This document shows, piece by piece, positions 1 through 58,689 of a stretch of 64,000 nucleotides of DNA. Origin of the DNA: Octopus sinensis (lineage: Eukaryota); the NCBI RefSeq assembly GCF_006345805.1, contig NC_042999.1, positions 134,912,001 to 134,976,000 of the forward strand, read 5' to 3'. Position numbers and translations under genes: made by a program. Numbering within the stretch: the first letter of the stretch is position 1; every line of letters starts with the position of its first letter. The notes below the pieces were generated by a model. It worked only from the letters and a program-made list of their open reading frames with translations, was not told the DNA's origin and did no database searches.

Positions 1-89
1 TGCATGTTTTTAAATTGTTGACTATTCTGGTTGAGGCCCAATTGACAACGCAAGGCTATAGAATTGCAAACATCAAGAGACATTAAATA

Positions 90-900: not shown

Positions 901-1010
901 GGCTTAGTCTGGTTCTTTTCATAATTTCAAAGCTTTAAATCTCAAAAGAAATAAAAATTAGGTGAGCTTTCAGGTGTTGAAGTGTGTATACATTGAGACA
1001 TGCTACAAGT

Positions 1011-1189
<179 letters not shown>

Positions 1190-1240
1190 ACATATGTGTG
1201 TATCTATTATACTTCTAATCTTTATTTGCAGAGAACCATA

Positions 1241-1585
1241 ATGAGGTATTTAATCTTGATTCTAACGCTGACCGTGACCGTTGTTTGTGCAGATGATTTT
1301 AACATAATAAAATCATTCACAAAATGTTACAAGAATTTCCAAAACAATGCTTTTGAATCGAACAAGAGGCAGGAGTGGCAGAAATACTGTTTGGATAACA
1401 ACCCTTATGTTCGGAAACGTTTTGGAGGTTGGGTTAACCAAATTCCAAACATTCATGACTATAATAATATGGGAGATGGTCCAAAGCCTATTAGGTCAAA
1501 GCAGGTCAGAAAGGAATATAGAATGCTCACTACAAAAGAGAGAAACGATTTCCATCACGCCATTAATCTATTAAAACAAGATACG
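1241..1585 (+). CDS. Tyrosinase-like gene copy 1, coding exon 1 (signal peptide, N-terminal RKE(Y)R motif)
   Basis: Acceptor tttatttgcag at 1231, ATG at 1241, MRYLILILTLTVTVVCA signal-like peptide, VRKEYRMLTTKERNDFHHAINLLK typical of tyrosinase N-termini, donor ACG|gtaagt at 1586 (phase 0). Confidence 0.9.
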
Positions 1586-1821
1586 GTAAGTTCTTTAGTT
1601 GATATCAGTTAATTAGCAAATTTAATCAACAATTTTTACTGTACTTTATTACAAATTCAGCAAATTTATTAATTTTCTTACACATGAAATTCGACAGTAT
1701 GTGACCTCATGCAATGTCCCAATGGTGTTGGTAACCTAAGTAAGGCGCAACATTTGTAATAAAATAGTAATCAATTATAGAGTTTAATTGTTGCTACAGC
1801 CGACGATATTGGAGCTAAAGT

Positions 1822-2430
1822 AAGGCGGCGAGCTGGAAGAAACGTTAGCACGCCGGGCGAAATGCGTAGCCGTATTTCGTCTGTTCTGAGTTCAAATTCC
1901 TCCGAGGTCGACTTTGCCTTTCATCCTTTCGGGGTCGATAAATTAAGTACCAGTTAAGCACTGGGGTCGATGTAATCGACTTAATCCGTTTGTCTGTCCT
2001 TGGTTGTCCCCTCTGTGTTTAGCCCCTTGTGGGTAGTAAAGAAATATGTATTTCGTCTATCTTTAAGTTCTGAGCTCAAATTCCGCCGAGGTCGACTTTG
2101 CCTTTCATCCTTTCGGAGTCGAAAAATTAAGCACCAGTTGAGTACTGGGGTCAATCTAATCGACTTTCCCATTCCCCCATTATTTCGGGCCTTGTACCTA
2201 GAGAAGAAAAGGATATTGAAGCTAGAGTAAGGCGGCGAGCTGGCAAAAACGTTAGCACGCCGGGCGATGCTTAGCGGTATTTCGTATATCTTTACGTTCT
2301 GAGTTTAAATTCCGGCGAGATCGACTTTGCCTTTCGTCCTTTCGTGGTCGATAAATTAAGTATCATTCGCGTACTGGCCCCCTCCCCAATAAATTTGGGC
2401 CTTCTGCCTACAGCAGAAAAGGATTTTGTA
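1822..2430 (+). mobile_element. Tandem trio of tRNA-derived SINEs (family A) in tyrosinase intron; duplicated at 18759-19370
   Basis: A-box-like GGCGAGCTGG and B-box GAGTTCAAATTCC followed by gaggtcgactttgcctttcatcctttcgg; many further copies in the window. Confidence 0.85.
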
Positions 2431-2435
2431 GCTAA

Positions 2436-2484
<49 letters not shown>

Positions 2485-2523
2485 CTTTATAATAACTAAT
2501 AATGGTCACTTTTTTTTATTTAG

Positions 2524-2636
2524 AGGTTGAAACCAAATGTTTATGATGCGATCGCCTTCCTCCATTCTGGTCCCACGGTTATAAACGCTCACGCTGGCCC
2601 ATCGTTTTTAGCTTGGCACAGAATCTACCTTAACAT
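2524..2636 (+). CDS. Tyrosinase-like gene copy 1, coding exon 2 (CuA site); absent from ORF track
   Basis: Acceptor ttttttatttag| then RLKPNVYDAIAFLHSGPTVINAHAGPSFLAWHRIYLN(M), with three CuA histidines (H...AH.GP.FL.WHR). Donor AT|gtaagt at 2637 (phase 2), matching exon 3. Confidence 0.92.
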
Positions 2637-2777
2637 GTAAGTATTTTCTTCCACACGTAAGAATTACTTTTGAACATTATTTATATTTGTTTTTATACCG
2701 TATTCTTCGAATATTTTAATACTTCATAAATCTTAGATCGATAATATATATGTTTATATATGTACACATGCACACGC

Positions 2778-2860
<83 letters not shown>

Positions 2861-3474
2861 TATTAGTATGTATTTATATAGGTATATATGTATGTATGTA
2901 TGCATGCATGTATGTAAGTATAATACACCCTAATGACTAAGCCACACGTCTTCACAGAAAAGTCCAGTGGTTACTAATATAAGAATCGAACTCTTTGCTT
3001 ATTCTTACTTGTCAAATAAGTTCGATGATTTCCTAGAAATTTTTTAACGAGTTCCTTCATATTCATATGAGATGGGAACGGGAAGAAATATACGGCCTCA
3101 ACATTTAGGATTAACATCTAGCGTTTAGAGACCCAAAGAGCAAGGAAGACTTCAAATTAAGTTTCTAGATTATGTCAATCACAGAGCATTTTGTTCATCT
3201 TACACTCAAACATTAGAGCAAGATTACATTTTCTTTACTGATTCTAATGATACGGAGTCATCCATAGCGCCCCCATAATCATAATCACCACTTTAGTTTA
3301 ATCATATACTCGATCTTTTTCATCATTATCACCACTACCATCATCATCATCGCCATCATCATCATCATCATCATCGCCATCATCATTATCAGCAGCAGCA
3401 GCAGCAGCATCGTCATCATCTTCGCTTTATTTATTGTATAATTTTTCTTTTTGTTTTTCATTTCATTTCCTCAG

Positions 3475-5032
3475 GATGGAAGAAGCTCTTAATACAAAGA
3501 TGCCAGGAATAACAATTCCGTATTGGGATCCAACACTTGACAGCTCTCTTGATGATCCTCGAGATTCCATTATCTGGACGGATAAATTCTTGGGAAATAT
3601 TAATGGAATTGTTAATTGTGGTCCGTTTGCTAACTGGAGCACACCAGCTGGGCCTCTGATAAGGAATGGTGGTTTTATTAGTAACTTACCAACTAATCGC
3701 GACATAGAAAATATTCTGAGCCGATGGAGACTTGCAGATATCACCGAACCAAATGCGATTATTAAATACAATTTGGAATTTCACCACAATTCTATGCACA
3801 ATTTTATTGGAGGACATTTAGGTCAACCAGAAACCTCTCCCATGGATCCAGTTTTCTGGCTAATCCACAGCTATATAGATCTTCTTATGAATCGTTTCAA
3901 TGAGAACCAAAAGAAGCACAATGTCGATCCTGCAACAGATTATCCATTAAATTATGGTTTACCAGTTTATGGTCCTGATCAAAAAATTGTTCTGAAGAAT
4001 ATAACAATCAGAGAAGCATTAAAACAAGCTCAATCTTCTAATTATGTTCCTCTATATGACTACGCTATACTGGAGATGCCATGTTACGAAAATTCAAATT
4101 TTCTTCCTTCTCCATATCTAACTTGCCACAAGGGAAGATATCAGACGAAAACTAGAAAATCAGCTGGTTGCAATGCTCTTATTCCCTATCAGAATATGTT
4201 TTGTATTAACCGTAAATGTGATCTAAAAGAATGGCATTTATTCCAGTTGAAGTAATTTACGAACGACCTTTCGAAACGATGAAATTTGGAAATTTCCCGA
4301 TCAGAAATGGCATACCAGATTTACTGACTGATCTATACGACAATAATATACCCCAAAATATCTCATCTAGTAACTCTACTTGCCGAAGTAAAAAGTGTTG
4401 TGGCCCCGCGGGAAGAGTCAGTGTGCAAGCCAGTGGCATCAATTATTTTGGTAACTATGAAGAAATGGTGATAGTTGATCGTAGATTAGCTGTGTCATCG
4501 GATATAGCCTACATTGGTATCAGAAGACCTACAACAAACTTCAGTCTGGTATTTACGACAGTTTCAGAACAATGTGGAAGAATATGTCGTCCTTCTTGCT
4601 TAGTGCCGGGTTCAAATCCACCGAGGTACACAGAATGTATAGGTCTGTTGAACTTAACTCACAATGATGCTCATTTCTACGGCAATACTCTGGCAGAAGC
4701 TTACATGAAAGTGTGGGATTATAAAAACCAGATACGACCGAAAGTAAGACACGAGAATATACCAATCGTATACCATTGTGATGACAGCCTGTGGCCATTT
4801 AACAACACCGACTATACAACAACAACAACACCATCATCTTGGACAACAGCGTCAACACGTACACGAACCACAACTACTACTACCACTACTACAACTCCAA
4901 CAACTACAACACCAACAACTACAACACCAACAACTACAACACCAACAACAACAAGTTGGGTATGGAGAACAACAACACCAACAACAAGATGGGAGTGGAA
5001 AACAACGACAAGCAGTGGTGATAGTAATATCT
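3475..5032 (+). pseudogene. Tyrosinase-like gene copy 1, coding exon 3 (CuB, Cys-rich domain, Thr/Pro linker), frameshifted as assembled
   Basis: Acceptor tcatttcctcag| at 3474, PYWD motif, CuB HHNSMHNFIGGH...DPVFWLIH, donor ATCT|gtaagt at 5033. Reads gaatggcatt at 4229-4238 versus gaatgggcatt in copy 2, so one G is missing, giving a stop at 4253-4255. May be a sequencing error. Confidence 0.85.
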
Positions 5033-5979
5033 GTAAGTATTTCATTTATCCACTCCTTTAATGAATGCATGTCTGTTTACGATATATATGTATCATATAC
5101 AATACAGGATTTTATATAATTTATTACAAAATCTGTTGATTCACTTATTTTTTCTTCTCAACAAGAGCCACGCCTGTTACTTATTTCCTTCCAAGTATTT
5201 TACATCAATAATCTCAACATATAACTAAGTGGTTGAGAGGCAGAGGCAGAGGCAGAGTAGAGCGAAAGATTAAATGTCTTGTATTTAATAATGTATCTTT
5301 ACTTTCTAAATTCAAATTCTCTTTGGATCAACTTTGGGTTTCACCATTCCGGTGCAGATAAAATAAGACCTGTGCCACGTGTCTAAAGTTTCATTTATAA
5401 GCTAAAGTCATTGAAAAGAAGAAATGTTAAACCAACAATGGCAGAGAAAAATGTGTGTCGATGCTAGAAATCATTATGTAATCAGTATTACAGCTATGCA
5501 TATCCTTAAAGCAAAACTAAGGACACGATTCCCCTACTTTTCTTATTTATAATATGTTTCTGATTTATAGCATTATCACATTCTAATTCGCAACATCCCT
5601 ATAATCTTAATTACGAAGTTCCTGAAATTAGTTTCATGAACCTCAATATTTTCGTGCATATTATTATCCACGAGAAAACCAATAATTAATATATTTATGC
5701 TTCATGTGATATTATATGAACCTTCTAAACTAGTTTGCAAGCATTCTTCACTATGGATGATAAAGCTAAAATTTGAAACATCGTTTATTCGGCTATAGGT
5801 TCACTTCAAAATGAAATACATGTGCATTTTAATATATATTGGAAAAATTACTAAAATATACCCCACTCACCCATCTTTTTCGTACCATTAAATCACTCCA
5901 TAATGTTTCCTTAAATTATATCTGATAAATCATACAAGATATAACATTTTTGCATCTCGTTTTTCTTTTTTCATTCCAG

Positions 5980-6191
5980 TTTGTAAAGTCGATAACTCTT
6001 GTGTAATCCCATCGAGATGTAGCTGTTCATACATGGAAAAGAAACCTTGCATGCAACTGTGCTCCCGATACGCCATATGTATTTACGGACAATATTTCGT
6101 TTTAAATTGCGGTTCTGGATTTAGATACAACCACCAACTGAAGCAGTGTGTTCGAGGATACTGCTCACACAGATACTTATCAAAGATATAG
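5980..6191 (+). CDS. Tyrosinase-like gene copy 1, coding exon 4 (Cys-rich CBM14/peritrophin-A-like chitin-binding module, stop codon); absent from ORF track
   Basis: Acceptor ttttcattccag| at 5979; phase 1 join gives FCKVDNSCVIPSRCSCSYMEKKPCMQLCSRYAICIYGQYFVLNCGSGFRYNHQLKQCVRGYCSHRYLSKI*. Spacing C-x5-C-x9-C-x12-C fits CBM14. Confidence 0.82.
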
Positions 6192-6563
6192 ATTTCACAC
6201 AAAATTACCGTTAATAATACCGTCACTTTCACATCCAACATTTGCTGTTAATATCAGAAATGTTGTTAGTCTTATTTATACGAAACCTATCGTCTATTAT
6301 TTAAATTAGTTGTTGTGTTTTTGTACTAAGTAACCAACAACAAATACATTAGTTTAGCTGTGCTAAACTGCCTTATAATCACCATAACCCCAAAATGATA
6401 TATTATTTAATATTTATGTCAAGTTGTCACCACATCCGGTTTTGAGTGAGGTTAATGACTACATTACACATACACACATACTTTGTATGTGTCTATATAT
6501 ACATGTATGTATACACATACACATCCATCCATCCATCCATCCATCCATCCATCCATCCATGCA

Positions 6564-6595
<32 letters not shown>

Positions 6596-9469
6596 CATAC
6601 ATACATACATACATACTTGCATATACATATGCATACTCACATGTGGTACATATTTATCTATTCATTCTCCTTGATGTCGACGATGATCATAGTTTATTTC
6701 TAAACTGTCGTTATTTTTATGACGAAATGCTGTGATCTGTAACAGAAGATCATTGATGCTGATCTTCGAAAATTATATTAACATTACATTCATACATATT
6801 TCACCCATTTTTCGTTCTGACGATGTAGCTCCATATCTTTAAAATCCATCCATTTCTTTGAGAAAGGCATTAAAGATGCATCTTCATATTTACCAATGAT
6901 ATCACACCCACACCACCGCAGAAATATTTGGGCATCAGGCCTCTTTTTCACTGACAATAAGAGCTATATATTTTAAACTATATAACTTTATGTTACGAAC
7001 GATGATAATTGTACTTGTTATAAACAATATCCCTTTGTTGTAAATGTCATATGTGATTATTGTTAAATAATAAATTATTTATTTCACGAATTATTTGCCT
7101 TATTGTTTATACTTACTTCACCGAATCTCATAAAGCAGACTTTGCGCCGATATAAAAAAAATGTTATTGTTATCGTGTAAGAGAAGTTACTGTATAGTTT
7201 CACGTTTTTAATAGTTTACGACGTGGTTATTTCGCCTAGAAAGCTTTATTTAATCCCAGATCAGTCTTGATCAAACTGATTAGGGATTAAACAATAACAA
7301 GCACTGTATATTACTAATTGAATCATCACATAAAAGACTTGATGTGCAACAAATTCCGAATAGATGTTAAAAGGTTCAGGCAACCAGCTCAGTAACAAAA
7401 GTGATTGAAATGATTGTATGAGTAACTCGGGGGTGCATACTAGTCTCACTTGGGTATGCATCTGCCTAGAAAGCGCAACACAACAGACAACAATTGATTT
7501 TTACATCATGTCCACAGGAAAAGAAACACATTATAAGCTTCTATTCATTCAGAATTCCTTAATTATGGAAGAGAGTGATTCTGAAATCTAGATATTCATT
7601 ATTATATTTTAAAAAGCGGTATAGACGTACGATATTAATAAAAAAAAATCTATTGTTTTTACTGGAGTTTTTGGGGATTTTTTGGGGGGGGGTGGTTGTA
7701 ATAGCAGTTAGTACTCAGGAAACATTTTCATAAGACAGAGAAGGAAAATCATCATTTCAAATGCAATAGTATTATTCAGATCTAAAATCGTTAAAACAAT
7801 GATTTTAAAACGTACTTCTTTTAGATATATCCACCATAAATTAAACTTCCCTGGTCTTTATATTTTGGAAATTTGGACATGGTTTGGAAATATGGATATG
7901 GCCAGTATCCAAATTTGGATATGGTTAATGCTCGATTTGAGGAAAAAGTGAATTGTGAATACTGAGTACTTAACGCAAGGTCTGGCAATATCTAAAATGA
8001 CTTTCAACTGATTTATAAAGATTCACTCGCAAAAGGTTTCTTCTCCCCATTTCTTCTGTACCTTCTGCTCTTTTGAACTAGCAAGCTACATACAATGTAC
8101 CTCTGAAATAAACTAATATACTCGCCTTTCCATCTCTCAACATTCTTATTTCTTTCCACTCACCTCCCAAAACTCTGCATGTGGCACATTTTGCTATCAC
8201 TTTTCTCGCAAACAGCATCCTTCGGATTTCACTCACTATCTACGTTTTTCCTATTGGCCTCAACGTTATAACTTATCATTATGGGAAGGCCTGCAAAATC
8301 CAGGACGCTAACTCACATCCTCAGTAAACGTGTTTTTAATGCGCAGTAGGGATGAGTTTAAATGGAAAATATATGCTGTATATGAGTTTAAATGGAAAAT
8401 ATATGCTGTAAGTTCAAAGTAGAAGACGTCTTTGTAGTAGCAACAGAAGAGACATAAAACGCACAAGTCATCGATGTAGGCTATTCCCCATGGACGAGTG
8501 AGAATGTGAGAAGTTGTTGTAGTAACAAAAAAAAAAGAGGGAGATGACATACAAGTTACTGGCGTTACTATTCCTCGTGTGGATGTGGGAGTTAGATGCA
8601 TCGTACACTTATTGAATACATATATCATAGTTTTGGAACGGTCTCGTGTTTACAGATGTAGGTTCGAGTTCCACAGACAGCCGTTGATTATTTCTATTTC
8701 CAGGCTTTTTTAACCCAATATTTACAGGCTATTATTCATAGCTTTATTTCGAGATTCACCGTTCCAAAAACAATTATTTCACGTTCAGGTGAAATAGTTA
8801 TATATGTGTGTGTATGTGGGTACATTACACACACATATATACATACATGCATACATACATACATACATACACACATACATACATACATACACACATACAT
8901 ACATACATACATACATACATACGTACATACATACATACATACATACATACATACATACAACTAATAAGCACTACAAGACTGTCATGTAATACAACAAACT
9001 ACAATTCTTACACGTTTTCAAGAAGAGCATCCTTAACAACCCCAGAATATGAAAACTTGGTCCCATCATCTCAGTTTTAAAGCTTAACAAAAAACTTAAC
9101 AAGAACAAGAGTCGTATCATACAGATACATCACCGTCTATGAACAATCTCAACTATTCGGGCTAACATACCTGTACTCAACACCTCCTTAACTTTTCAGC
9201 ATTTAAGCAGCCAATATCTGCCTAAACTTTTTATGTGACTTATGTTCAAATCGGCCAGATATGGGCTCTCACAGCTACCCTACAATGTCATTTTTAAAAT
9301 AAACAGTCACATCATCAAAATCTCGAAGATACGAGATAATGCATGATTAATTCAAAAGTTATGTGAATAAATATGCATTGCACTTGGCAAAATGATCTGA
9401 ATGCTAAATGGTTAAGAAACAACACAAAGTGTTCTATATTTAAGAGTTGAGAAATTATATACATTATTT

Positions 9470-10665
9470 ACATTATTTACAATTGACTGATATTTGTCCT
9501 CATCTTTGTTGTTAACACAACGTTTCAGCTGATATACCCTCTAGCCTTCATCAGGTGTCTAGGGGAAATTTCGACCTGGGTTCCAGCAGGCAAGGGAAAT
9601 GCTACAAGTGGTGATGAACAAGTCTGACTACTCGAAAAAACTAGCAAGTCTTATAAGTGATGGTAGCTATAGCAAAGTAAAGAAAGACCCTACTTTGAAA
9701 ACAGAGAGCAAGTTGTCACAGATCTTGATCAAGAACAAGGATCACTTTGCACCAATGAAGTACAGACAACTGACTCAACACTACAGCAAACTACCACACG
9801 TGTACGGTCTTCCTAAGATTCACGAGGATGGTATTCCATTAAGAGCTATAGTGAGCTGTAGCGGTTCAGCATGTCATCCACTGAGCTGCTTCCTTGTGGA
9901 TATAATCAGTCCATTAGCAGAAAAGTCAACATCGTATGTGAAGAATTCCACCCACTGAATCCAACCAGATGGTGAGTCTAGTCTGTTCACCAAAGTCTCA
10001 ACTGGTGAGGCACTATCGGTGATTCAAGAAAAACTAGTGACAGACACCCATCTAAAAGAACGTACTAGTATACCACTAAGAAATTTGATGGAAATGTTGA
10101 CCTTCTGTATAGAAACTACCTACTTCAGTATGGACACTGATATATATCGACAAAAAGTGGGTTTAGCTATGGGTTCACCATTATCACCAATAATAGCCAA
10201 TATATACATGGAATACATTGAGAATTTGGCTTTAGGATCAACACCACTAAAACCAACCCTATGGCCGCGATACGTTGATGACACCTTTATACTCTAGCTC
10301 CACCAGGAAGATGTCCAAGTGTTGTTAGATCATGTGAACTCAATAAAGCCATCCATACAGTTCACAATGGAAAAAGAAAAAAACAATCAACTAGCATTCT
10401 TGGACGTATTAATAACACGCACCAAGGATGGATTCAGAACATGCGTATACCGCAAACCGACCTTCACTGAACGATACCTCAACTTCACAACTCCCATCAC
10501 CACCACCAACAACAACATCGAAAAATACCTTAGAAAAGAGAACCCAGGTTCGAAATTTCCCCAAGACACCTGATAAAGGCTAGATGGTATATCAGCTGAA
10601 ACGTTGAGGTCAGCTGAAACGTTAAGGACAAAATAAGGACAAATATCCGTCAATTGTAAATAACG
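9470..10665 (+). mobile_element. 5'-truncated Penelope-like element (RT fragment) flanked by inverted ~110-bp terminal repeats
   Basis: PLE RT motifs YGLPKIHEDGIPLRAIVS, LAMGSPLSPIIANIYME and RYVDDTF. 9476-9582 is the reverse complement of 10541-10660. Confidence 0.85.
9514..9559 (-). ncRNA. Minimal type I hammerhead ribozyme motif in PLE terminal repeat
   Basis: Minus strand reads GACAC-CTGATGA-AGGCTAGAGGGTATATCAGCT-GAAAC-GTT-GTGTT: catalytic cores CUGAUGA and GAAA, stem I ACAC/GUGU, palindromic AACGUU stem III, GUU triplet. Confidence 0.65.
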
Positions 10666-11215
10666 AGTACAAAGTGTTGCTTAATTAACTACATCCTATG
10701 TCATCTAATTTGTGTAGTATAATCTGTGCAGTATACAAGGACCTAACTACCGGAACGTGTGATTTCTCGAATTTGGTACACTTGCTTTTGTATAACTTGT
10801 CTCTAGACAATCTCTCACAACCTTATATGAAGATAAGATTACACTCACATTCTCCCATCATTCTTTAATAACAGTTGCGTAATTACTTCAAACTTTCATC
10901 AATTACCTAGATAGCTGGTTGCAAAACAACTGTAGACCAACCAAACTCATTACCTTCCCGACCTGCAACACCCGAGGACATTAAATACAACCAATCATCA
11001 CATTCGAAAACATAACTAAAACACTGAAAACAAATATACTAGTATCTATCAATCTCTATCTCTCTCTCTTCATATATATACAAGCTTGCTTCCCTACACA
11101 TGGTTCTGGGTTCAGTCCCATTGCGTAGCAACTTAGGCAAGTGTGTTCTACTGTAGACTCAGGCCGACCAAAGCCTTGCGAGTGGATTTGGTAGATGGAA
11201 ACAGAAAGACGCCCG

Positions 11216-11256
<41 letters not shown>

Positions 11257-11862
11257 TGTGTGTTGAAGCAAATAGGAGAAAAAGAACGCTTAGTAAGAGC
11301 ATATATATTTTTTAATCGGTTGTAAAGTTACATAAGTGGCTCAAGATCTGTGAGTTTGTCATACAAGAGACTCTCGGCTCATTTTAAGTTAACCCTGTAA
11401 CCTGTCCTTCTGGAGTTTCCCCACATGTGATCGATTTTTCTCAAACAAGGTTAAAAAAACTGAATAAAGGATAAAGATATCTCGTTGTGACAGAGGAAAC
11501 ATGATAATATGCGATTAGCTGAACATACAAATCGGCTTTTGGCCAAGGTCAACAGAAAAGAACACCAGGGTGAAGGAGAAGGGTGAGCAAAAGTCTGTGT
11601 ATGTAGAAGAAGGAAAAGAGAAAGAGAAAGAGAAAACGAGATGTTCTCTTTCGCATACCTGCGTGTAAAAACAATTTTTCTTGTTAATGAACAGACACTT
11701 CTACAGTGACAAAAAACATTATTATATATTCCCCAGATTAATGTAAATCCCATTTAATACACAACCTGTTCATTCTGATGCATAACTGTAGATTCCTTCG
11801 ATACAATGTAAACAGAGATAACCAAAGAAGAAATAACAGCAATTATCGAAATAGTGAGTCAT

Positions 11863-12192: not shown

Positions 12193-14557
12193 ATGGCGAC
12201 CCCCGTCGCCGTACAGATGAATCTACATCCGATTATGAACTGGGATTCTAGTGATGTCGTAGAAGCATTTAAAAAATTCAAACAAAAAACTCAACTAGCT
12301 TTCAAAAGTTTCCTGAAAGGCACAACTGACGATGAGAAGGTAAGCTATATCCTTCTATGGTCAGGTAATAAAGGAATAGACCTATTCAATAGCTGGGATA
12401 TGTCAGAATCGGACTGCAATAACCCAGACACACTTCTTGAGAAATTTGAAAGGCACCTAGAGCCCAGGTCGAACCATAGAATTCACAGATACGAATTCCA
12501 GGGCCTGAAACAAGACCCACAAGAAACAATTGACAATTTCCTGTCAAGACTGAAAAATATTGCAGAGAAATCAAATTCAAAGACAGGGAGGAGAGAATTG
12601 TAGACCAATTAATATGGGGGTGTGCCCACAAAGAAGTACAAAAATCACTAATAGGTAAGGACGCTCTCCAGTTGGTAGAAGCAGTAGACACTGCAAGAGC
12701 ATTCGAAGCCACTACCAAACAGATGGCCTCACTTAATTACGAACAAGCTCACTTGGTAGCAGTGTAGATACTGTATCTAGGCACAGGACACATACCCACA
12801 AACAAAGAACATGCCAGTACTGTGGTACAGAGCATGAATTTAATAACCGGAAAAAATGTCCTGCATTCGGTACACACTGCAAATGATGTGGAAAAATTAA
12901 CCACTGGAAAAAAATGTGTAGATTAACAAAATCCCAGAAAGACAAGCCCCAATTTTTAAAGAGGAGCAGAAATAGAAGAGATATACATGCACAACAACAG
13001 GAACAAAACACCCCAGAGGAGGAATTCTTGGTAGTCGGCATAATAAATGTGCATGAGATGGGAAAGGACGACCGGAAGAAAGAAGATGAGGCATACACGA
13101 CAATAAGAATTCAAAAGAAGGCCGGAAGGAAAAGAACAAACATAGACTTAAGGCTGAAGATAGACACTGGGGCCCAGAGTGATATCTTGCCTGTCAGCTT
13201 ATACAAGAAGATGTTCCCAGAAAATATGACAGAAGAGGATAGGGTCAGGAAAGGAATCCTCACACCAAGTGATGTGGTTCTCACTGCGTACGGAGGAACC
13301 AGGATTCCACAACTGGGTAAAACAACTATCACAGGGACACACAAAGTAAAAATAATTAAGTGTTCTTTTTATGTCACAAGAACAGAAGGGCCAGCAATTC
13401 TTGGACTCAATACCTGCAAAAATTTAAATATTGTGTCGGTCAATGGTGAAGTGAAAGCAGCTCCAAGCAGGATTGACAGTGATATGCCTATCAAAGACCG
13501 ACCACCAATCACAAACAAACAGGAGATGGAAGGACTAAGCATAAAGGTCCACCACATTGTAAATGTGACAACCACAAAGCTTGCGGAAATCAAAGAGGAG
13601 ACCAGCAAAGATGAAGAACATCAGCTCCTTACACAGATGGTGATTCAGGGGTGGCCAGAAAAGAGACATCAGGTACAGCCCCTAATTCGTGAATATTGGG
13701 CCATCCATAATGATATATCAGTGGAGGATGGAATCCTGATGGCTGGATCCCGAATAATTATACCCAAGTCAATGCAAGAAGAGATTCTTGACAAGATCCA
13801 CCAAGGGCATCTCGGAATGGAAAAATGCAAGCTCCGAGCCAAGTCAGCAGTATATTGAGTAGGCATGTACAAATACATAGAAAAGAGAGTTTCTACATGC
13901 CACATCTGTCAAAAGTACAGAAACTCACAACAAAAGGAAGAAATGATATCTAGTGACATCCCAAGAAGGCCATGGCAAACTATTGGAGTAGATCTGCTCA
14001 CAGAGGGCCAAGAATGGTATTTGATAATGGCCTGCTACTACTCCAAATTTCCATTTGTGAGAAAAGTGAAAGACCTGACAGCCAAAACAATCACCACAGT
14101 AGCTCGAGGACTTCTAGCAGAGCAAGGAATACCAGAGCAGATCATATGTGATAATGGAACCCAGTTCACATCACAAGAATTCAAAAAGCTTGCCGATGAG
14201 TATGGGTTCAATATTACAACTTCATCTCCACACTACCCCAAAGGCCATGGGTTTATAGAAAGACAGGTGCAGACAGTGAAGAGAACACTAGTCAAATGCC
14301 GAGAGACTAAGGAAGACCCACACCTGGCACTTCTGTCCCTACGAGCGACACCACTGAGAGCTGATATGAAATCCCCAGCAGAATTGCTGAATGGCAGGAA
14401 GTACAAAACTACCCTGCCAACTAAAATCCAACCTCCTATTGACCAGGAAGAGACAAGGGCAAAGCTAGCAGCCACTCAAGAACAATCACAGAGGTATTAC
14501 AACAAACATGCACAATATTTACCTGAGATACTTGGAGGACAACATGTGCATACTTAA
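12193..14557 (+). pseudogene. Disrupted gag-pro-int polyprotein of the gypsy element
   Basis: ORFs 12193..12603, 12914..13858 and 13865..14557; a frameshift in gag, in-frame TGA at ~12884 and 13856, TAA at 14555. Protease region joins directly to the post-RNase H linker near 13520. Confidence 0.9.
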
Positions 14558-15049: not shown

Positions 15050-15257
15050 TGTTACACATTCATATCTATGTGTATACGTGCATCCCCACTCTTGGCACTA
15101 TTTTGTTAGTGAATAGTACAAACTGTGTGTAAAGTGTATAACGTATTACTACGCTGAAGGTCGAGTCCGTGTAACATGTAAAGCAAATAAACACGTAACA
15201 ATAACAATGGTTTTCATTTGGTTGTCTATCCCATTAGAACCCAAACTACACACAACA
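15050..15257 (+). repeat. 3' LTR (208 bp)
   Basis: Direct repeat of 11863-12069, preceded by the polypurine tract. Confidence 0.95.
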
Positions 15258-18021: not shown

Positions 18022-18125
<104 letters not shown>

Positions 18126-18177
18126 ACATATGTGTGTATCTATTTATACTTCTAATCTTTATTTGCAGAGAACCATA

Positions 18178-18522
18178 ATGAGGTATTTAATCTTGATTCT
18201 AACGCTGACCGTGACCGTTGTTTGTGCAGATGATTTTAACATAATAAAATCATTCACAAAATGTTACAAGAATTTCCAAAACAATGCTTTTGAATCGAAC
18301 AAGAGGCAGGAGTGGCAGAAATACTGTTTGGATAACAACCCTTATGTTCGGAAACGTTTTGGAGGTTGGGTTAACCAAATTCCAAACATTCATGACTATA
18401 ATAATATGGGAGATGGTCCAAAGCCTATTAGGTCAAAGCAGGTCAGAAAGGAATATAGAATGCTCACTACAAAAGAGAGAAACGATTTCCATCACGCCAT
18501 TAATCTATTAAAACAAGATACG
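18178..18522 (+). CDS. Tyrosinase-like gene copy 2, coding exon 1
   Basis: Acceptor AG at 18167-18168, ATG at 18178, donor gtaagt at 18523; translation identical to copy 1. Confidence 0.92.
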
Positions 18523-19372
18523 GTAAGTTCTTTAGTTGATATCAGTTAATTAGCAAATTTAATCAACAATTTTTACTGTACTTTATTACAAATTCAGCAA
18601 ATTTATTAATTTTCTTACACATGAAATTCGACAGTATGTGACCTCATGCAATGTCCCAATGGTGTTGGTAACCTAAGTAAGGCGCAACATTTGTAATAAA
18701 ATAGTAATCAATTATAGAGTTTAATTGTTGCTACAGCCGACGATATTGGAGCTAAAGTAAGGCGGCGAGCTGGAAGAAACGTTAGCACGCCGGGCGAAAT
18801 GCGTAGCCGTATTTCGTCTGTTCTGAGTTCAAATTCCTCCGAGGTCGACTTTGCCTTTCATCCTTTCGGGGTCGATAAATTAAGTACCAGTTAAGCACTG
18901 GGGTCGATGTAATCGACTTAATCCGTTTGTCTGTCCTTGGTTGTCCCCTCTGTGTTTAGCCCCTTGTGGGTAGTAAAGAAATATGTATTTCGTCTATCTT
19001 TAAGTTCTGAGCTCAAATTCCGCCGAGGTCGACTTTGCCTTTCATCCTTTCGGAGTCGAAAAATTAAGCACCAGTTGAGTACTGGGGTCAATCTAATCGA
19101 CTTTCCCATTCCCCCATTATTTCGGGCCTTGTACCTAGAGAAGAAAAGGATATTGAAGCTAGAGTAAGGCGGCGAGCTGGCAAAAACGTTAGCACGCCGG
19201 GCGATGCTTAGCGGTATTTCGTATATCTTTACGTTCTGAGTTTAAATTCCGGCGAGATCGACTTTGCCTTTCGTCCTTTCGTGGTCGATAAATTAAGTAT
19301 CATTCGCGTACTGGCCCCCTCCCCAATAAATTTGGGCCTTCTGCCTACAGCAGAAAAGGATTTTGTAGCTAA

Positions 19373-19417
<45 letters not shown>

Positions 19418-19456
19418 CTTTATAATAACTAATAATGGTCACTTTTTTTTATTTAG

Positions 19457-19569
19457 AGGTTGAAACCAAATGTTTATGATGCGATCGCCTTCCTCCATTC
19501 TGGTCCCACGGTTATAAACGCTCACGCTGGCCCATCTTTTTTAGCTTGGCACAGAATCTACCTTAACAT
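19457..19569 (+). CDS. Tyrosinase-like gene copy 2, coding exon 2 (CuA)
   Basis: Same 113-nt exon with canonical AG/GT; one synonymous change (TCG to TCT, Ser) relative to copy 1. Confidence 0.92.
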
Positions 19570-19710
19570 GTAAGTATTTTCTTCCACACGTAAGAATTAC
19601 TTTTGAACATTATTTATATTTGTTTTTATACCGTATTCTTCGAATATTTTAATACTTCATAAATCTTAGATCGATAATATATATGTTTATATATGTACAC
19701 ATGCACACGC

Positions 19711-19779
<69 letters not shown>

Positions 19780-20393
19780 TATTAGTATGTATTTATATAG
19801 GTATATATGTATGTATGTATGCATGCATGTATGTAAGTATAATACACCCTAATGACTAAGCCACACGTCTTCACAGAAAAGTCCAGTGGTTACTAATATA
19901 AGAATCGAACTCTTTGCTTATTCTTACTTGTCAAATAAGTTCGATGATTTCCTAGAAATTTTTTAACGAGTTCCTTCATATTCATATGAGATGGGAACGG
20001 GAAGAAATATACGGCCTCAACATTTAGGATTAACATCTAGCGTTTAGAGACCCAAAGAGCAAGGAAGACTTCAAATTAAGTTTCTAGATTATGTCAATCA
20101 CAGAGCATTTTGTTCATCTTACACTCAAACATTAGAGCAAGATTACATTTTCTTTACTGATTCTAATGATACGGAGTCATCCATAGCGCCCCCATAATCA
20201 TAATCACCACTTTAGTTTAATCATATACTCGATCTTTTTCATCATTATCACCACTACCATCATCATCATCGCCATCATCATCATCATCATCATCGCCATC
20301 ATCATTATCAGCAGCAGCAGCAGCAGCATCGTCATCATCTTCGCTTTATTTATTGTATAATTTTTCTTTTTGTTTTTCATTTCATTTCCTCAG

Positions 20394-21964
20394 GATGGAA
20401 GAAGCTCTTAATACAAAGATGCCAGGAATAACAATTCCGTATTGGGATCCAACACTTGACAGCTCTCTTGATGATCCTCGAGATTCCATTATCTGGACGG
20501 ATAAATTCTTGGGAAATATTAATGGAATTGTTAATTGTGGTCCGTTTGCTAACTGGAGCACACCAGCTGGGCCTCTGATAAGGAATGGTGGTTTTATTAG
20601 TAACTTACCAACTAATCGCGACATAGAAAATATTCTGAGCCGATGGAGACTTGCAGATATCACCGAACCAAATGCGATTATTAAATACAATTTGGAATTT
20701 CACCACAATTCTATGCACAATTTTATTGGAGGACATTTAGGTCAACCAGAAACCTCTCCTATGGATCCAGTTTTCTGGCTAATCCACAGCTATATAGATC
20801 TTCTTATGAATCGTTTCAATGAGAACCAAAAGAAGCACAATGTCGATCCTGCAACAGATTATCCATTAAATTATGGTTTACCAGTTTATGGTCCTGATCA
20901 AAAAATTGTTCTGAAGAATATAACAATCAGAGAAGCATTAAAACAAGCTCAATCTTCTAATTATGTTCCTCTATATGACTACGCTATACTGGAGATGCCA
21001 TGTTACGAAAATTCAAATTTTCTTCCTTCTCCATATCTAACTTGCCACAAGGGAAGATATCAGACGAAAACTAGAAAATCAGCTGGTTGCAATGCTCTTA
21101 TTCCCTATCAGAATATGTTTTGTATTAACCGTAAATGTGATCTAAAAGAATGGGCATTTATTCCAGTTGAAGTAATTTACGAACGACCTTTCGAAACGAT
21201 GAAATTTGGAAATTTCCCGATCAGAAATGGCATACCAGATTTACTGACTGATCTATACGACAATAATATACCCCAAAATATCTCATCTAGTAACTCTACT
21301 TGCCGAAGTAAAAAGTGTTGTGGCCCCGCGGGAAGAGTCAGTGTGCAAGCCAGTGGCATCAATTATTTTGGTAACTATGAAGAAATGGTGATAGTTGATC
21401 GTAGATTAGCTGTGTCATCGGATATAGCCTACATTGGTATCAGAAGACCTACAACAAACTTCAGTCTGGTATTTACGACAGTTTCAGAACAATGTGGAAG
21501 AATATGTCGTCCTTCTTGCTTAGTGCCGGGTTCAAATCCACCGAGGTACACAGAATGTATAGGTCTGTTGAACTTAACTCACAATGATGCTCATTTCTAC
21601 GGCAATACTCTGGCAGAAGCTTACATGAAAGTGTGGGATTATAAAAACCAGATACGACCGAAAGTAAGACACGAGAATATACCAATCGTATACCATTGTG
21701 ATGACAGCCTGTGGCCATTTAACAACACCGACTATACAACAACAACACCATCATCTTGGACAACAGCGTCAACACGTACACGAACCACAACTACTACTAC
21801 CACTACTACAACTCCAACAACTACAACACCAACAACTACAACACCAACAACTACAACACCAACAACTACAACACCAACAACAACAAGTTGGGTATGGAGA
21901 ACAACAACACCAACAACAAGATGGGAGTGGAAAACAACGACAAGCAGTGGTGATAGTAATATCT
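20394..21964 (+). CDS. Tyrosinase-like gene copy 2, coding exon 3 (CuB, molluscan Cys-rich domain, Thr/Pro linker), intact
   Basis: 1571-nt open exon with phases 2 and 1 consistent with both neighbours. Contains YWD, HHNSMHNFIGGH...SPMDPVFWLIH, FCINRKCDLKEWAFIPVEVI, GINYFGNY, CGRICRPSC and PTTTT repeats. Confidence 0.93.
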
Positions 21965-22914
21965 GTAAGTATTTCATTTATCCACTCCTTTAATGAATGC
22001 ATGTCTGTTTACGATATATATGTATCATATACAATACAGGATTTTATATAATTTATTACAAAATCTGTTGATTCACTTATTTTTTCTTCTCAACAAGAGC
22101 CCACGCCTGTTACTTATTTCCTTCCAAGTATTTTACATCAATAATCTCAACATATAACTAAGTGGTTGAGAGGCAGAGGCAGAGGCAGTAGAGCGAAAGA
22201 TTAAATGTCTTGTATTTAATAATGTATCTTTACTTTCTAAATTCAAATTCTCTTTGGATCAACTTTGGGTTTCACCATTCCGGTGCAGATAAAATAAGAC
22301 CTGTGCCACGTGTCTAAAGTTTCATTTATAAGCTAAAGTCATTGAAAAGAAGAAATGTTAAACCAACAATGGCAGAGAAAAATGTGTGTCGATGCTAGAA
22401 ATCATTATGTAATCAGTATTACAGCTATGCATATCCTTAAAGCAAAACTAAGGAACACGATTCCCCTACTTTTCTTATTTATAATATATGTTTCTGATTT
22501 ATAGCATTATCACATTCTAATTCGCAACATCCCTATAATCTTAATTACGAAGTTCCTGAAATTAGTTTCATGAACCTCAATATTTTCGTGCATATTATTA
22601 TCCACGAGAAAACCAATAATTAATATATTTATGCTTCATGTGATATTATATGAACCTTCTAAACTAGTTTGCAAGCATTCTTCACTATGGATGATAAAGC
22701 TAAAATTTGAAACATCGTTTATTCGGCTATAGGTTCACTTCAAAATGAAATACATGTGCATTTTAATATATATTGGAAAAATTACTAAAATATACCCCAC
22801 TCACCCATCTTTTTCGTACCATTAAATCACTCCATAATGTTTCCTTAAATTATATCTGATAAATTCATATAAGATATAACATTTTTGCATCTCGTTTTTC
22901 TTTTTTCATTCCAG

Positions 22915-23126
22915 TTTGTAAAGTCGATAACTCTTGTGTAATCCCATCGAGATGTAGCTGTTCATACATGGAAAAGAAACCTTGCATGCAACTGTGCTCC
23001 CGATACGCCATATGTATTTACGGACAATATTTCGTTTTAAATTGCGGTTCTGGATTTAGATACAACCACCAACTGAAGCAGTGTGTTCGAGGATACTGCT
23101 CACACAGATACTTATCAAAGATATAG
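22915..23126 (+). CDS. Tyrosinase-like gene copy 2, coding exon 4 (CBM14-like module, stop)
   Basis: Acceptor cattccag| at 22914, TAG at 23124-23126. Total spliced CDS is 345+113+1571+212 = 2241 nt, i.e. 746 aa plus stop. Confidence 0.85.
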
Positions 23127-26100: not shown

Positions 26101-26311
26101 ATATGGGCTCTCACAGCTACCCTACAATGTCATTTTTAAAATAAACAGTCACATCATCAAAATCTCGAAGATACGAGATAATGCATGATTAATTCAAAAG
26201 TTATGTGAATAAATATGCATTGCACTTGGCAAAATGATCTGAATGCTAAATGGTTAAGAAACAACACAAAGTGTTCTATATTTAAGAGTTGAGAAATTAT
26301 ATACATTATTT

Positions 26312-28104: not shown

Positions 28105-28180
<76 letters not shown>

Positions 28181-58580: not shown

Positions 58581-58689
58581 ACCACAACACTAAATTAGCT
58601 TTTTTTTTTATTAAAATAATCATTTTCCGGTTTAAAAGAATTTTTTTACAAATCATGAAGATGGGCGTTTATAAAACGCAGTGGGTACT

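What the first reader, a model, noticed from the sequence alone, without database searches (positions are those of the whole stretch)
18178..23126. Secreted tyrosinase with mucin-like linker and a hidden C-terminal chitin-binding (CBM14-like) exon
Seen: phase-consistent GT-AG splicing of four exons gives a 746-aa protein, and exons 2 and 4 are absent from the ORF track. The last exon has 10 Cys, including C-x11-C-x5-C-x9-C-x12-C-x4-C with aromatic residues (Y31, F48, Y50 of the exon peptide) at typical positions. Established: peritrophin-A/CBM14 domains show C-x5-C-x9-14-C-x12-C spacing, and type-3 copper tyrosinases oxidise catechols for sclerotisation and pigmentation. Inference: enzyme, O-glycosylated stalk and chitin anchor (the architecture of GH18 chitinases) would tether quinone cross-linking to a chitin scaffold. 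Candidate sites in a shell-less cephalopod are beak, radula, sucker cuticle or egg stalk. Molluscan tyrosinases with chitin-binding domains may already be described, so novelty is uncertain.
Basis: partly seen in the sequence, partly recalled or inferred. Interest (0 to 1): 0.7.

Follow-up and report, generated by a model that had tools for sequence, protein, structure and literature searches.

The report
Octopus tyrosinase with chitin-binding-like tail
The four-exon gene is real and already in RefSeq as an "uncharacterized" Octopus sinensis protein: a secreted copper phenol oxidase with a threonine-rich stalk and a small cysteine-rich end domain of the chitin-binding (peritrophin-A/CBM14) fold, a layout shared by many molluscan tyrosinases but apparently never described as such.

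Summary
Exons 18178-18522, 19457-19569, 20394-21964 and 22915-23126 splice GT-AG in phase to a 746-aa protein. That protein is letter-for-letter RefSeq XP_029634295.1 ("uncharacterized protein LOC115209860", Octopus sinensis). The window is CM016861.1:134,912,001-134,976,000, so the last exon is hidden only from an ORF track.

The protein has a signal-peptide-like start, a tyrosinase domain (Pfam 103 bits, six His ligands), a conserved Cys-rich beta-rich middle domain, an 86-residue linker (46 Thr) and a 10-Cys C-terminal domain.

The window's own C-terminal domain misses the Pfam CBM_14 threshold (18.4 vs 22.1 bits). Homologous domains of gastropod tyrosinases pass it. A profile of the domain family retrieves peritrophin-type proteins, and the AlphaFold model's 14 best PDB matches are all CBM14 folds. 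The same domain ends cephalopod, gastropod and bivalve tyrosinases, and the Argonauta orthologue has the same four exons.

Chitin binding is untested. The closest solved relative (Aplysia EHEP) binds polyphenols, not chitin.

A near-identical tandem copy lies at 1241-6191 and carries a 1-bp frameshift as assembled.

Verdict: ordinary annotated gene; correct, modestly interesting domain reading.

The parts
18178..18522 (+). Exon 1 (aa 1-115): start codon, signal-peptide-like N-terminus MRYLILILTLTVTVVCA, N-terminal region with 3 Cys
   Evidence: mean Kyte-Doolittle hydropathy 2.6 over aa 3-15. The start aligns with the start of the Argonauta orthologue. The signal peptide is inferred by inspection, not by a predictor.
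19457..19569 (+). Exon 2 (aa 116-153): CuA site with H129, H138 and H147 (H-x8-H-x8-H)
   Evidence: These histidines are nearly invariant in the 22-sequence alignment. The same short exon is present in the Argonauta locus L001 at 15001-15117.
20394..21964 (+). Exon 3 (aa 153-677): CuB site (H257, H261, H284), conserved Cys-rich middle domain, Thr-rich linker
19469..20820 (+). Span encoding the Pfam Tyrosinase domain (aa 120-295), interrupted by intron 2
   Evidence: PF00264, E = 3.8e-29, 103 bits against a cut-off of 22.6. Coordinates converted from the CDS map.
20953..21705 (+). Middle domain (about aa 340-590): beta-rich, 13 Cys, no Pfam family; includes the WAFIPVE and CGRxC motifs conserved across molluscan tyrosinases
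   Evidence: No Pfam hit even at E <= 10 (protein 3). Many nearly invariant columns. Beta strands with block-mean pLDDT mostly 67-88 in the orthologue model. Foldseek alignments to hemocyanin functional units run over about 520 columns.
21706..21963 (+). Thr/Pro-rich mucin-like linker (aa 591-676), containing a 15-nt in-frame repeat (PTTTT, 6.7 copies at 21787-21886)
   Evidence: Composition. Tandem repeat. The equivalent stretch in the orthologue model has pLDDT about 30. The repeat number differs between the two gene copies.
22915..23126 (+). Exon 4 (aa 677-746 plus stop): 10-Cys C-terminal domain, a divergent peritrophin-A/CBM14 fold
22992..23087 (+). Core that matches Pfam CBM_14 profile positions 14-45 (aa 703-734: C-x5-C-x9-C-x12-C with Y707, F724, Y726)
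   Evidence: 18.4 bits and E = 0.0024 for the isolated exon peptide, below the gathering score of 22.1.
1241..6191 (+). Second, tandem copy of the gene (exons 1241-1585, 2524-2636, 3475-5032, 5980-6191). As assembled, a 1-bp deletion in a GGG run at about 4232 shifts the frame after aa 405. It also has one PTTTT repeat fewer and 3 extra bases.
1..11658 (+). Duplicated block A, which matches 17001-28619 (block B, holding the gene of the finding)
   Evidence: 98.7% and 97.0% identity over the two blastn segments. There are about 4-5 substitutions in the first 6.5 kb (genic) and about 60 in the last 5 kb. The left end is cut by the window start.
12193..14557 (+). Retrotransposon remnant in the spacer between the two copies (integrase-core ORF at 13865-14557)
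   Evidence: ORFs. PF00665 rve, E = 6.2e-11. Not assembled or reconstructed.

Best explanation
The locus is LOC115209860 of Octopus sinensis. It encodes a secreted, modular type-3 copper phenol oxidase (tyrosinase).

Domain order:
- signal peptide;
- di-copper catalytic domain with all six histidine ligands;
- a conserved Cys-rich, beta-rich middle domain of unknown role, possibly a cap comparable to the beta domain of hemocyanin functional units;
- an 86-residue Thr/Pro-rich, probably O-glycosylated and extended stalk;
- a C-terminal 10-Cys module whose core is a divergent peritrophin-A/CBM14 fold.

Most likely mode of action: the enzyme is exported by an epithelium. The terminal module holds it on an extracellular matrix, most probably chitin-containing. 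The flexible stalk lets the catalytic head reach nearby tyrosine or catechol groups. Oxidation to DOPA and quinones then drives local cross-linking (tanning) or melanin deposition. This is the same modular logic as GH18 chitinases (catalytic domain, Ser/Thr hinge, CBM14).

The architecture is ancestral for a clade of molluscan tyrosinases (cephalopods, gastropods, bivalves). In octopods the genes sit in tandem clusters that are still duplicating or converting.

Shown: gene structure, domain identities, conservation.
Inferred: secretion, glycosylation, the ligand of the terminal module, the tissue and the substrate.
For: Gene model:
- Exact identity of the spliced product to XP_029634295.1.
- The window is identical to CM016861.1 at that gene.
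- The Argonauta orthologue has the same four-exon layout.
- A gastropod homologue with the same end domain sits on a 2,525-nt contig, too short for introns. This is my inference that it is a transcript (P0009).

Enzyme:
- PF00264 at 103 bits.
- H129/H138/H147 and H257/H261/H284 are present and are invariant or nearly invariant in 22 homologues.
- The orthologue model matches Bacillus megaterium tyrosinase at E = 5e-15, TM 0.73-0.77 normalised to the target.

Terminal module:
- 10 of 12 homologous domains hit CBM_14, best E = 5e-7.
- Bulinus (P0013, precomputed PF01607) and P0165 (24.9 bits) pass Pfam's threshold within tyrosinases.
- A profile of the domain finds only CBM14 proteins in the PDB: EHEP E = 1.1e-4, CHIT1 CBM14, Blo t 12, chitinases.
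- The same profile finds 1,124 proteins among 1.84 billion representatives. The top hits are multi-repeat proteins, and 9 of 10 sampled reach Pfam's CBM_14 cut-off (the tenth, P0144, 20.7 bits).
- The AlphaFold model has pLDDT 86.9. Its 14 best PDB matches are all CBM14 folds.

Context from papers:
- HcTyp-1 (P0020), which carries the module, is expressed in nacre-secreting mantle epithelium (PMC7045039).
- Tyrosinases are highly expressed in Argonauta arm and mantle tissue (10.1101/2021.07.10.451900).
- A Biomphalaria albumen-gland phenoloxidase is linked to cross-linking of egg-shell proteins (PMC5201427).
Against: - The window's own module scores below Pfam's CBM_14 cut-off.
- Foldseek E-values are weak (0.04-0.8), as is usual for 70-residue domains.
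- The N-terminal half of the module (four extra Cys) and the short C5-x4-C6 spacing are not canonical.
- EHEP and Der p 23 have the CBM14 fold but do not bind chitin (PMC10619976), so the fold does not prove the ligand.
- There are no expression data, activity data or glycosylation data for this gene.
- The full-length structural model is of the 64%-identical Argonauta orthologue, not of this protein. It has only moderate confidence (pLDDT 71).
Confidence: 0.6

Rival explanations
1. Same protein, different ligand. The terminal peritrophin-A-like module binds phenolic or quinone-tanned material, DOPA-rich proteins or another matrix protein rather than chitin. It would then recruit substrate or product to the oxidase.
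For: - The closest solved relative by sequence profile (E = 1.1e-4) and by fold (rank 1-2, 36-37% identity) is Aplysia EHEP.
- EHEP is a molluscan protein of three peritrophin-A domains that precipitates phlorotannin and tannic acid and has no chitin-binding activity. Der p 23 also lacks chitin binding (PMC10619976).
- The module is rich in exposed-type aromatic residues (Y707, Y712, Y715, F716, F724, Y726, Y737).
Against: - In EHEP the tannic-acid pocket is built jointly by three domains and two linker loops, not by a single domain. Here there is only one domain.
- Most characterised CBM14 modules attached to enzymes through Ser/Thr linkers are chitin anchors: CHIT1 and an insect chitinase appear in the hit list.
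Confidence: 0.2
2. Immune or mucosal phenoloxidase. The module recognises chitin of fungi, parasites or prey cuticle and directs melanisation or quinone toxicity to them, rather than building the animal's own structures.
For: - CBM14-fold proteins include the antimicrobial chitin-binder tachycitin.
- Tyrosinase copper-binding-domain proteins are among the source proteins listed for peptides of the O. vulgaris skin-mucus proteome (PMC11431876).
- Recent tandem duplication is common in defence genes (general knowledge).
Against: - No immune-expression data exist for this gene.
- The same architecture is conserved over three molluscan classes with all 10 Cys fixed.
- It occurs in a mantle-epithelium shell-related gene, HcTyp-1, which suits a structural role.
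Confidence: 0.1
3. Pigment enzyme. This is a melanin-pathway tyrosinase (skin, eye or ink), and the tail has no targeting role.
For: - It is a bona fide tyrosinase.
- Cephalopod tyrosinases are known from the ink sac (Illex Tyr2, P0015). A tyrosinase marks the cell cluster interpreted as chromatophores in squid (PMC9839350).
Against: - The Illex tyrosinase (P0015) is only 35% identical and lacks both the linker and the terminal module.
- Strong conservation of the module argues that it matters.
- No transmembrane segment for melanosomal anchoring: the maximum 19-residue hydropathy beyond the signal peptide is 1.08.
Confidence: 0.07
4. The terminal exon is not used in this gene, or the gene is not functional. 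The enzyme would end a few codons into intron 3.
For: - An in-frame stop lies 27 nt into intron 3.
- One ENA gene model of a relative (P0006) ends without the module.
- The neighbouring copy is frameshifted as assembled.
Against: - The RefSeq model uses the exon, and the read-through product is not in the protein collection.
- The donor is a perfect GTAAGT and the acceptor has a strong pyrimidine tract.
- The exon is intact, with all 10 Cys, and is conserved in position in Argonauta.
Confidence: 0.03

Closest known systems
Octopus paralogues annotated as 'tyrosinase-like protein tyr-1 / tyr-3' (O. sinensis P0003, O. vulgaris P0002) and the Argonauta hians genes GAB1611244.1 (P0001), GAB1611243.1 (P0181, second half) and P0004
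   Same: - Same order of parts: signal peptide, tyrosinase, Cys-rich middle domain, Thr-rich linker, 10-Cys end domain.
- Same four exons in Argonauta.
- Linked or tandem genes: P0004 and P0001 lie about 95 kb apart on one contig, and P0181 is a fused model of two neighbouring copies.
   Different: 60-64% identity only, so this is a distinct paralogue. Linker length and repeat type differ.
Gastropod and bivalve tyrosinases with a recognised or recognisable CBM_14 end domain (Bulinus truncatus P0013, Biomphalaria glabrata P0010, Plakobranchus P0016, Sinohyriopsis cumingii Tyrp-1/HcTyp-1 P0020, P0165)
   Same: Homologous end domain with the same 10 Cys. Pfam CBM_14 is above threshold in P0013 and P0165. 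Same middle domain.
   Different: About 30-37% identity. Linkers are Pro-rich rather than Thr-rich. Gastropod domains have a 7-residue insert in the N-terminal half.
GH18 chitinases and chitotriosidase with a Ser/Thr-rich hinge and a C-terminal CBM14 (PDB 5hbf, 6so0, 3w4r)
   Same: Same modular logic (enzyme, flexible hinge, one C-terminal CBM14). The CBM14 core aligns.
   Different: The catalytic domain is unrelated (a glycoside hydrolase, not a copper oxidase). The canonical module has 6 Cys, against 10 Cys here.
EHEP, 25-kDa polyphenol-binding protein of Aplysia kurodai (PDB 8in3/8in6)
   Same: It is the best sequence-profile and fold match for the end domain. It is molluscan and built of peritrophin-A domains.
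   Different: It has three domains and no enzyme, binds phlorotannin and tannic acid in a pocket formed by all three domains, and has no chitin binding (PMC10619976).
Nematode tyrosinases (TYR family) with C-terminal ShKT domains (P0025-P0028)
   Same: Secreted tyrosinase followed by small disulfide-rich C-terminal module(s). The catalytic domain is 26-39% identical.
   Different: The end module is ShKT (PF01549), not CBM14. There is no ShKT hit here.
Cephalopod tyrosinase Illex argentinus Tyr2 (P0015) and molluscan hemocyanin functional units
   Same: Type-3 copper core. Hemocyanin functional units align structurally over the core plus a beta domain.
   Different: Illex Tyr2 lacks the linker and end domain. 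There is no hemocyanin beta-sandwich Pfam hit here. This protein has a single catalytic unit.

Membership tests
Tyrosinase / type-3 copper protein (Pfam PF00264) | Profile match above the curated threshold | tested here: met
   103 bits against a cut-off of 22.6, E = 3.8e-29, aa 120-295 covering profile positions 2-212 of 214.
Tyrosinase / type-3 copper protein (Pfam PF00264) | Six histidine copper ligands (CuA H-x8-H-x8-H; CuB H-x3-H-x~21-H) | tested here: met
   H129, H138, H147 and H257, H261, H284 are present. The equivalent columns are invariant or nearly invariant in 22 homologues.
Tyrosinase / type-3 copper protein (Pfam PF00264) | Four-helix-bundle fold like solved tyrosinases | tested here: met
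   The model of the 64%-identical Argonauta orthologue matches B. megaterium tyrosinase at E = 5e-15, TM 0.73-0.77 normalised to the target. The test was on the orthologue, because the spliced window protein could not be submitted.
Tyrosinase / type-3 copper protein (Pfam PF00264) | Mono- or diphenol oxidase activity | not testable with these tools
   Needs an enzyme assay.
Peritrophin-A / CBM14 (Pfam PF01607) | Profile match above the curated threshold | tested here: not met
   The window's domain scores 18.4 bits alone (12.3 in the whole protein) against a cut-off of 22.1, and matches profile positions 14-45 of 53 only. Homologous domains in other tyrosinases do pass: P0013, P0165 at 24.9 bits and P0110 at 26.6 bits.
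Peritrophin-A / CBM14 (Pfam PF01607) | Six-Cys register C1-x(11-24)-C2-x5-C3-x(9-14)-C4-x12-C5-x(5-9)-C6 | tested here: inconclusive
   C2 to C5 fit exactly (x5, x9, x12). C1-C2 is x11 only if an intervening Cys is skipped. C5-C6 is x4, shorter than usual. Four extra Cys lie upstream. The EHEP register for comparison is CX15CX5CX9CX12CX5-9C.
Peritrophin-A / CBM14 (Pfam PF01607) | Homology detectable at profile level to bona fide members | tested here: met
   A profile of 11-12 tyrosinase end domains hits only CBM14 proteins in the PDB. Among 1.84 billion representatives it hits 1,124 proteins at E <= 0.001. 9 of 10 sampled reach Pfam's CBM_14 cut-off, most with 6-13 repeats; P0144 scores 20.7 bits, just below it.
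Peritrophin-A / CBM14 (Pfam PF01607) | CBM14 fold (two small antiparallel sheets held by disulfides) | tested here: met
   The AlphaFold model of the exon-4 peptide has pLDDT 86.9 and is all-beta. Foldseek ranks 1-14 are all CBM14 structures with probability 0.60-1.00, but the E-values are only 0.04-0.8.
Peritrophin-A / CBM14 (Pfam PF01607) | Binding to chitin | not testable with these tools
   Needs a pull-down or ITC. Some members of the fold (EHEP, Der p 23) do not bind chitin.
Nematode-type tyrosinase with ShKT tail | C-terminal ShKT domain (PF01549) | tested here: not met
   No ShKT hit at E <= 10.
Molluscan hemocyanin functional unit | Hemocyanin beta-sandwich domain (pfam14830) and multi-unit chain | tested here: not met
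   There is no such Pfam hit and only a single catalytic unit. A structural alignment to functional units over about 520 columns exists but has rmsd about 17 A.

The most novel reading that the evidence does not exclude
A whole clade of conchiferan tyrosinases, so far described as single-domain enzymes, carries an ancestral 10-Cys peritrophin-A-like end module. In the most novel reading, this module does not anchor to chitin. It binds phenolic or DOPA-rich or quinone-tanned material, as the related Aplysia EHEP binds polyphenols, making it a substrate- or product-recruiting domain on a polyphenol oxidase. Shell-less octopods would retain it and amplify it in tandem for a non-shell matrix.
Probability: 0.12. 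Interest if true: 0.6.

Novelty: new member of a known kind. Interest (0 to 1): 0.33.

Why it matters
Molluscan tyrosinases turn up again and again in shell, periostracum and egg-capsule matrices. The papers I could search describe them as a signal peptide plus one tyrosinase domain.

A conserved stalk-plus-CBM14-like anchor would give a simple physical reason why the enzyme stays in insoluble, chitin-bearing matrices and acts locally. It would also offer a handle (the isolated 70-residue module) for finding where these enzymes act in a shell-less octopus.

For genome annotation the lesson is small. LOC115209860 can be renamed from "uncharacterized protein" to a tyrosinase with a peritrophin-A-like C-terminal domain, and the upstream copy needs checking.

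Tried and rejected
I used the exact exon-4 translation instead. For the full length I used the Argonauta orthologue.
- A word-indexed protein search with the end-domain alignment returned nothing at E <= 0.001. A 70-residue domain cannot reach that E-value in 5.8 billion sequences. The exhaustive profile search did work.
- The first full-length search showed no hit above 64% identity, and I wrongly suspected an unannotated species. The reason was that the 90% cluster is represented by a 155-aa O. bimaculoides fragment. The exact look-up resolved it.
- Context look-ups for P0002 and P0003 were not on record.
- Paper searches for an explicit tyrosinase-CBM14/ChtBD2 description in molluscs found both domains listed side by side in shell proteomes, but never in one protein. 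Subscription-only papers (e.g. Aguilera et al. 2014; Chen et al. 2017) were not searchable, so absence is not proven.
- ShKT, hemocyanin beta-domain and known tyrosinase C-terminal Pfam families were considered for the middle and end domains and rejected for lack of any hit.
- CBM_19 gives weaker, overlapping hits (7 of 12 members). I treat these as cross-talk between Cys-rich chitin-binding profiles.
- I could not decide whether the two gene copies are a true tandem duplication, a gene-conversion tract or a retained haplotype in the assembly.

Full report
**1. What is in the sequence**

Each intron starts with GTAAGT, and each acceptor is a pyrimidine tract ending in AG. The exons join in phase to 2,241 nt and 746 codons, ending in TAG at 23124-23126.

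Read-through of the third donor stops at 21991-21993. Exon 2 is too short to appear in an ORF list. Exon 4 appears only as a 52-aa ATG-started fragment when the cut-off is lowered to 40 aa. The Cys count, Cys spacing and aromatic positions quoted for exon 4 are correct.

**2. Identity of the locus**

An exact-sequence look-up shows that the 746-aa product is letter-for-letter RefSeq XP_029634295.1 / UniRef100_A0A6P7S7Y8, "uncharacterized protein LOC115209860 [Octopus sinensis]". The DNA returned for that gene is identical to window 8178-33126. This places the window at GCA_006345805.1 CM016861.1:134,912,001-134,976,000.

The read-through variant without exon 4 is not in the protein collection. 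In O. bimaculoides only 151-155-aa fragments of the orthologue are annotated. So the exon is hidden from an ORF track but not from NCBI's gene model. What the annotation lacks is a name and a domain description.

**3. The enzyme**

- Pfam gives Tyrosinase (PF00264) at 103 bits against a cut-off of 22.6, over aa 120-295.
- The CuA histidines are H129, H138 and H147 (H-x8-H-x8-H). The CuB histidines are H257, H261 and H284. All are present and fall in invariant or nearly invariant columns of a 22-sequence alignment.
- The N-terminus MRYLILILTLTVTVVCA looks like a signal peptide (mean hydropathy 2.6). No later segment is hydrophobic enough for a membrane span. Secretion is therefore inferred, not shown.
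- An AlphaFold model of the 64%-identical Argonauta orthologue was used because the spliced window protein is not accepted by the tool. Its catalytic core is confident (block means mostly 70-94). Its best PDB match is Bacillus/Priestia megaterium tyrosinase (E = 5e-15, 29-30% identity, TM 0.73-0.77 normalised to the target).

**4. The middle domain and the linker**

Residues about 340-590 have no Pfam family, even at E <= 10. They are nevertheless strongly conserved across molluscan tyrosinases: many Cys, and the WAFIPVE and CGRxC motifs.

This region is predicted to be beta-rich. Foldseek alignments to hemocyanin functional units run over about 520 columns, against about 300 for bacterial tyrosinases. 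This hints at a counterpart of the hemocyanin beta domain. The superposition is poor (rmsd about 17 A), so I leave it as a lead.

Residues 591-676 hold 46 Thr, 8 Ser and 8 Pro in 86 positions. They are encoded partly by a 15-nt in-frame repeat (PTTTT, 6.7 copies, 21787-21886). The repeat number differs between the two gene copies in the window. The equivalent stretch is disordered in the orthologue model (pLDDT about 30). "Mucin-like" is right as a statement of composition. O-glycosylation itself is inferred.

**5. The terminal exon**

On its own, the window's exon-4 peptide scores 18.4 bits (E = 0.0024) on Pfam CBM_14. That is below the gathering score of 22.1 and covers profile positions 14-45 only. 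By the strict Pfam test it therefore fails. Four further lines of evidence place it in that family at the level of homology and fold.

- (a) The same 10-Cys domain ends tyrosinases of cephalopods (Octopus, Argonauta), gastropods (Bulinus, Biomphalaria, Plakobranchus, Elysia and a Logan transcript-sized contig) and bivalves (Saccostrea, Sinohyriopsis, partly Potamilus). Ten of the twelve domains hit CBM_14, with a best E of 5e-7. Bulinus P0013 and P0165 are tyrosinases with CBM_14 above threshold.
- (b) A profile of the domain family finds only CBM14 proteins in the PDB: EHEP (E = 1.1e-4), the chitotriosidase CBM14, Blo t 12 and chitinases.
- (c) The same profile, run against 1.84 billion representative proteins, finds 1,124 proteins at E <= 0.001. 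The top hits carry 5-47 repeats, mostly aligned to profile positions about 33-64. Nine of ten sampled hits reach Pfam's CBM_14 cut-off, most with 6-13 copies; the tenth (P0144) scores 20.7 bits.
- (d) An AlphaFold model of the exon-4 peptide is confident (pLDDT 86.9). Its 14 best PDB matches are all CBM14 folds: EHEP, Blo t 12, Der p 23, Avr4, chitotriosidase, tachycitin and Der f 23. The E-values are weak (0.04-0.8), as expected for so small a domain.

The non-canonical parts are the N-terminal half, with four extra Cys, and a short C5-x4-C6 spacing.

**6. Support for the splice from relatives**

The Argonauta hians orthologue locus (L001) has the same four coding blocks in the same order, including a separate terminal exon for this domain. 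O. sinensis and O. vulgaris paralogues annotated as tyrosinase-like tyr-1/tyr-3 have the same order of parts. A 763-aa gastropod homologue with the domain lies on a 2,525-nt contig. That contig leaves no room for introns, so it is most simply a transcript (my inference).

**7. What it most likely does**

The best-supported reading is a secreted phenol oxidase held on an extracellular matrix by its terminal module. The Thr-rich stalk would act as a spacer, the modular logic known from GH18 chitinases with a Ser/Thr hinge and a CBM14.

Chitin is the most probable ligand, because that is what enzyme-attached CBM14 modules usually bind. Relatives with the module are also expressed where chitin-protein matrices are laid down. 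HcTyp-1 is expressed in nacre-secreting mantle epithelium (PMC7045039). Phenoloxidase activity in the Biomphalaria albumen gland is linked to cross-linking of egg-shell proteins (PMC5201427). Argonauta tyrosinases are very highly expressed in arm and mantle tissue (10.1101/2021.07.10.451900).

None of this tests the ligand. The closest solved relative, Aplysia EHEP, has CBM14-fold domains that bind polyphenols and not chitin, and Der p 23 does not bind chitin either (PMC10619976). On a polyphenol oxidase, a phenolic-binding module is a serious rival. One caveat: EHEP's pocket needs three domains together.

Two further rivals are less likely: an immune role (targeting foreign chitin) and a pigment role. 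The Illex argentinus tyrosinase Tyr2 lacks both linker and module.

**8. Surroundings**

- Window 1-11658 is a second copy of 17001-28619 (98.7% and 97.0% identity over the two blastn segments). It holds a second gene at 1241-6191.
- In that copy, exons 1 and 4 are identical in DNA and exon 2 has one synonymous change.
- Exon 3 of that copy differs by one substitution, a 3-bp insertion, one PTTTT repeat fewer and a 1-bp deletion in a GGG run. As assembled, the deletion shifts the frame after residue 405.
- Substitutions are about 0.07% in the genic 6.5 kb but about 1.2% in the 3' flank. This pattern fits recent gene conversion or very recent duplication. A retained haplotype or a homopolymer error in the assembly cannot be excluded.
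- The spacer between the copies carries a retrotransposon remnant with an integrase-core ORF.
- In Argonauta, the gene next to the orthologue is a 1,618-aa fused model of two more copies. It has a long tract 100% identical to the orthologue and an end domain closer to the window's. A further paralogue lies about 95 kb away on the same contig. Tandem clusters with conversion therefore seem typical of this family in octopods.

**9. Novelty**

The gene model is public. Tyrosinases and CBM14 modules are both well known. The combination is already visible in precomputed Pfam annotation of a snail protein.

In the papers I could search, molluscan tyrosinases are described as single-domain enzymes with a signal peptide. 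I found no description of a tyrosinase with a chitin-binding or peritrophin-type tail. Key subscription papers were not searchable.

I therefore file it as a new, sub-threshold member of a known kind. It is of modest interest to people working on molluscan sclerotisation and biomineralisation.

Noticed in passing
window 1-11658 vs 17001-28619: An 11.7-kb block is present twice in tandem (98.7% and 97.0% identity over the two blastn segments). Its left end is cut by the window start. Substitutions are about 0.07% in the genic half and about 1.2% in the 3' half, which suggests gene conversion, very recent duplication, or a retained haplotype in the assembly.
   Followed up: partly
window 1241-6191 (frameshift near 4232): The upstream gene copy has GG where the downstream copy has GGG (21152-21154). 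As assembled, this truncates the protein after residue 405. No separate protein for this copy appeared in the 90% cluster of XP_029634295.1. It is either a pseudogene or a homopolymer error.
   Followed up: partly
window 12193-14557: Retrotransposon remnant in the spacer between the two tyrosinase copies: three consecutive + strand ORFs, the last with a Pfam integrase core (rve, E = 6e-11). It was not reconstructed.
   Followed up: partly
window 18740-19340 (intron 1) and 1822-2377; also 53743-54516: The finding's intron 1 appears, by eye, to hold about three tandem copies of a roughly 230-bp element; blastn shows it recurs 74-76% identical near 53.7-54.5 kb and in the upstream gene copy. It looks like a dispersed SINE-type repeat and was not classified.
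   Followed up: no
window 58681-59124 (+), 47952-48644 (+), 30798-31529 (-): Other mobile-element debris: a reverse-transcriptase fragment (RVT_1, E = 1e-12), an ORF with C2H2 zinc fingers, and a 243-aa ORF without a Pfam hit. No other cellular gene was seen in the window.
   Followed up: partly
L001/L002 (Argonauta hians BAAFZT010000184.1) and protein P0181: The Argonauta gene next to the orthologue is a 1,618-aa fused model of two further tyrosinase copies. A tract of several hundred residues is 100% identical to the orthologue, flanked by diverged ends. This is a conversion-like pattern, and it is also a gene-model merge that should be split.
   Followed up: partly
window 20953-21705 (aa about 340-590): A roughly 250-residue Cys-rich, beta-rich domain follows the tyrosinase domain. 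It has no Pfam family but is strongly conserved across molluscan tyrosinases (WAFIPVE, CGRxC). It may correspond to the beta domain that caps the active site in hemocyanin functional units.
   Followed up: partly
window 18013-18123, 19375-19415, 19704-19840, 20239-20339, 23456-23549: Dense microsatellites ((TA)56, (TG)20, (CA)n, (TCA)34, (ACAT)23) lie in the promoter-proximal region, the introns and the 3' flank. Their lengths differ between the two gene copies.
   Followed up: no
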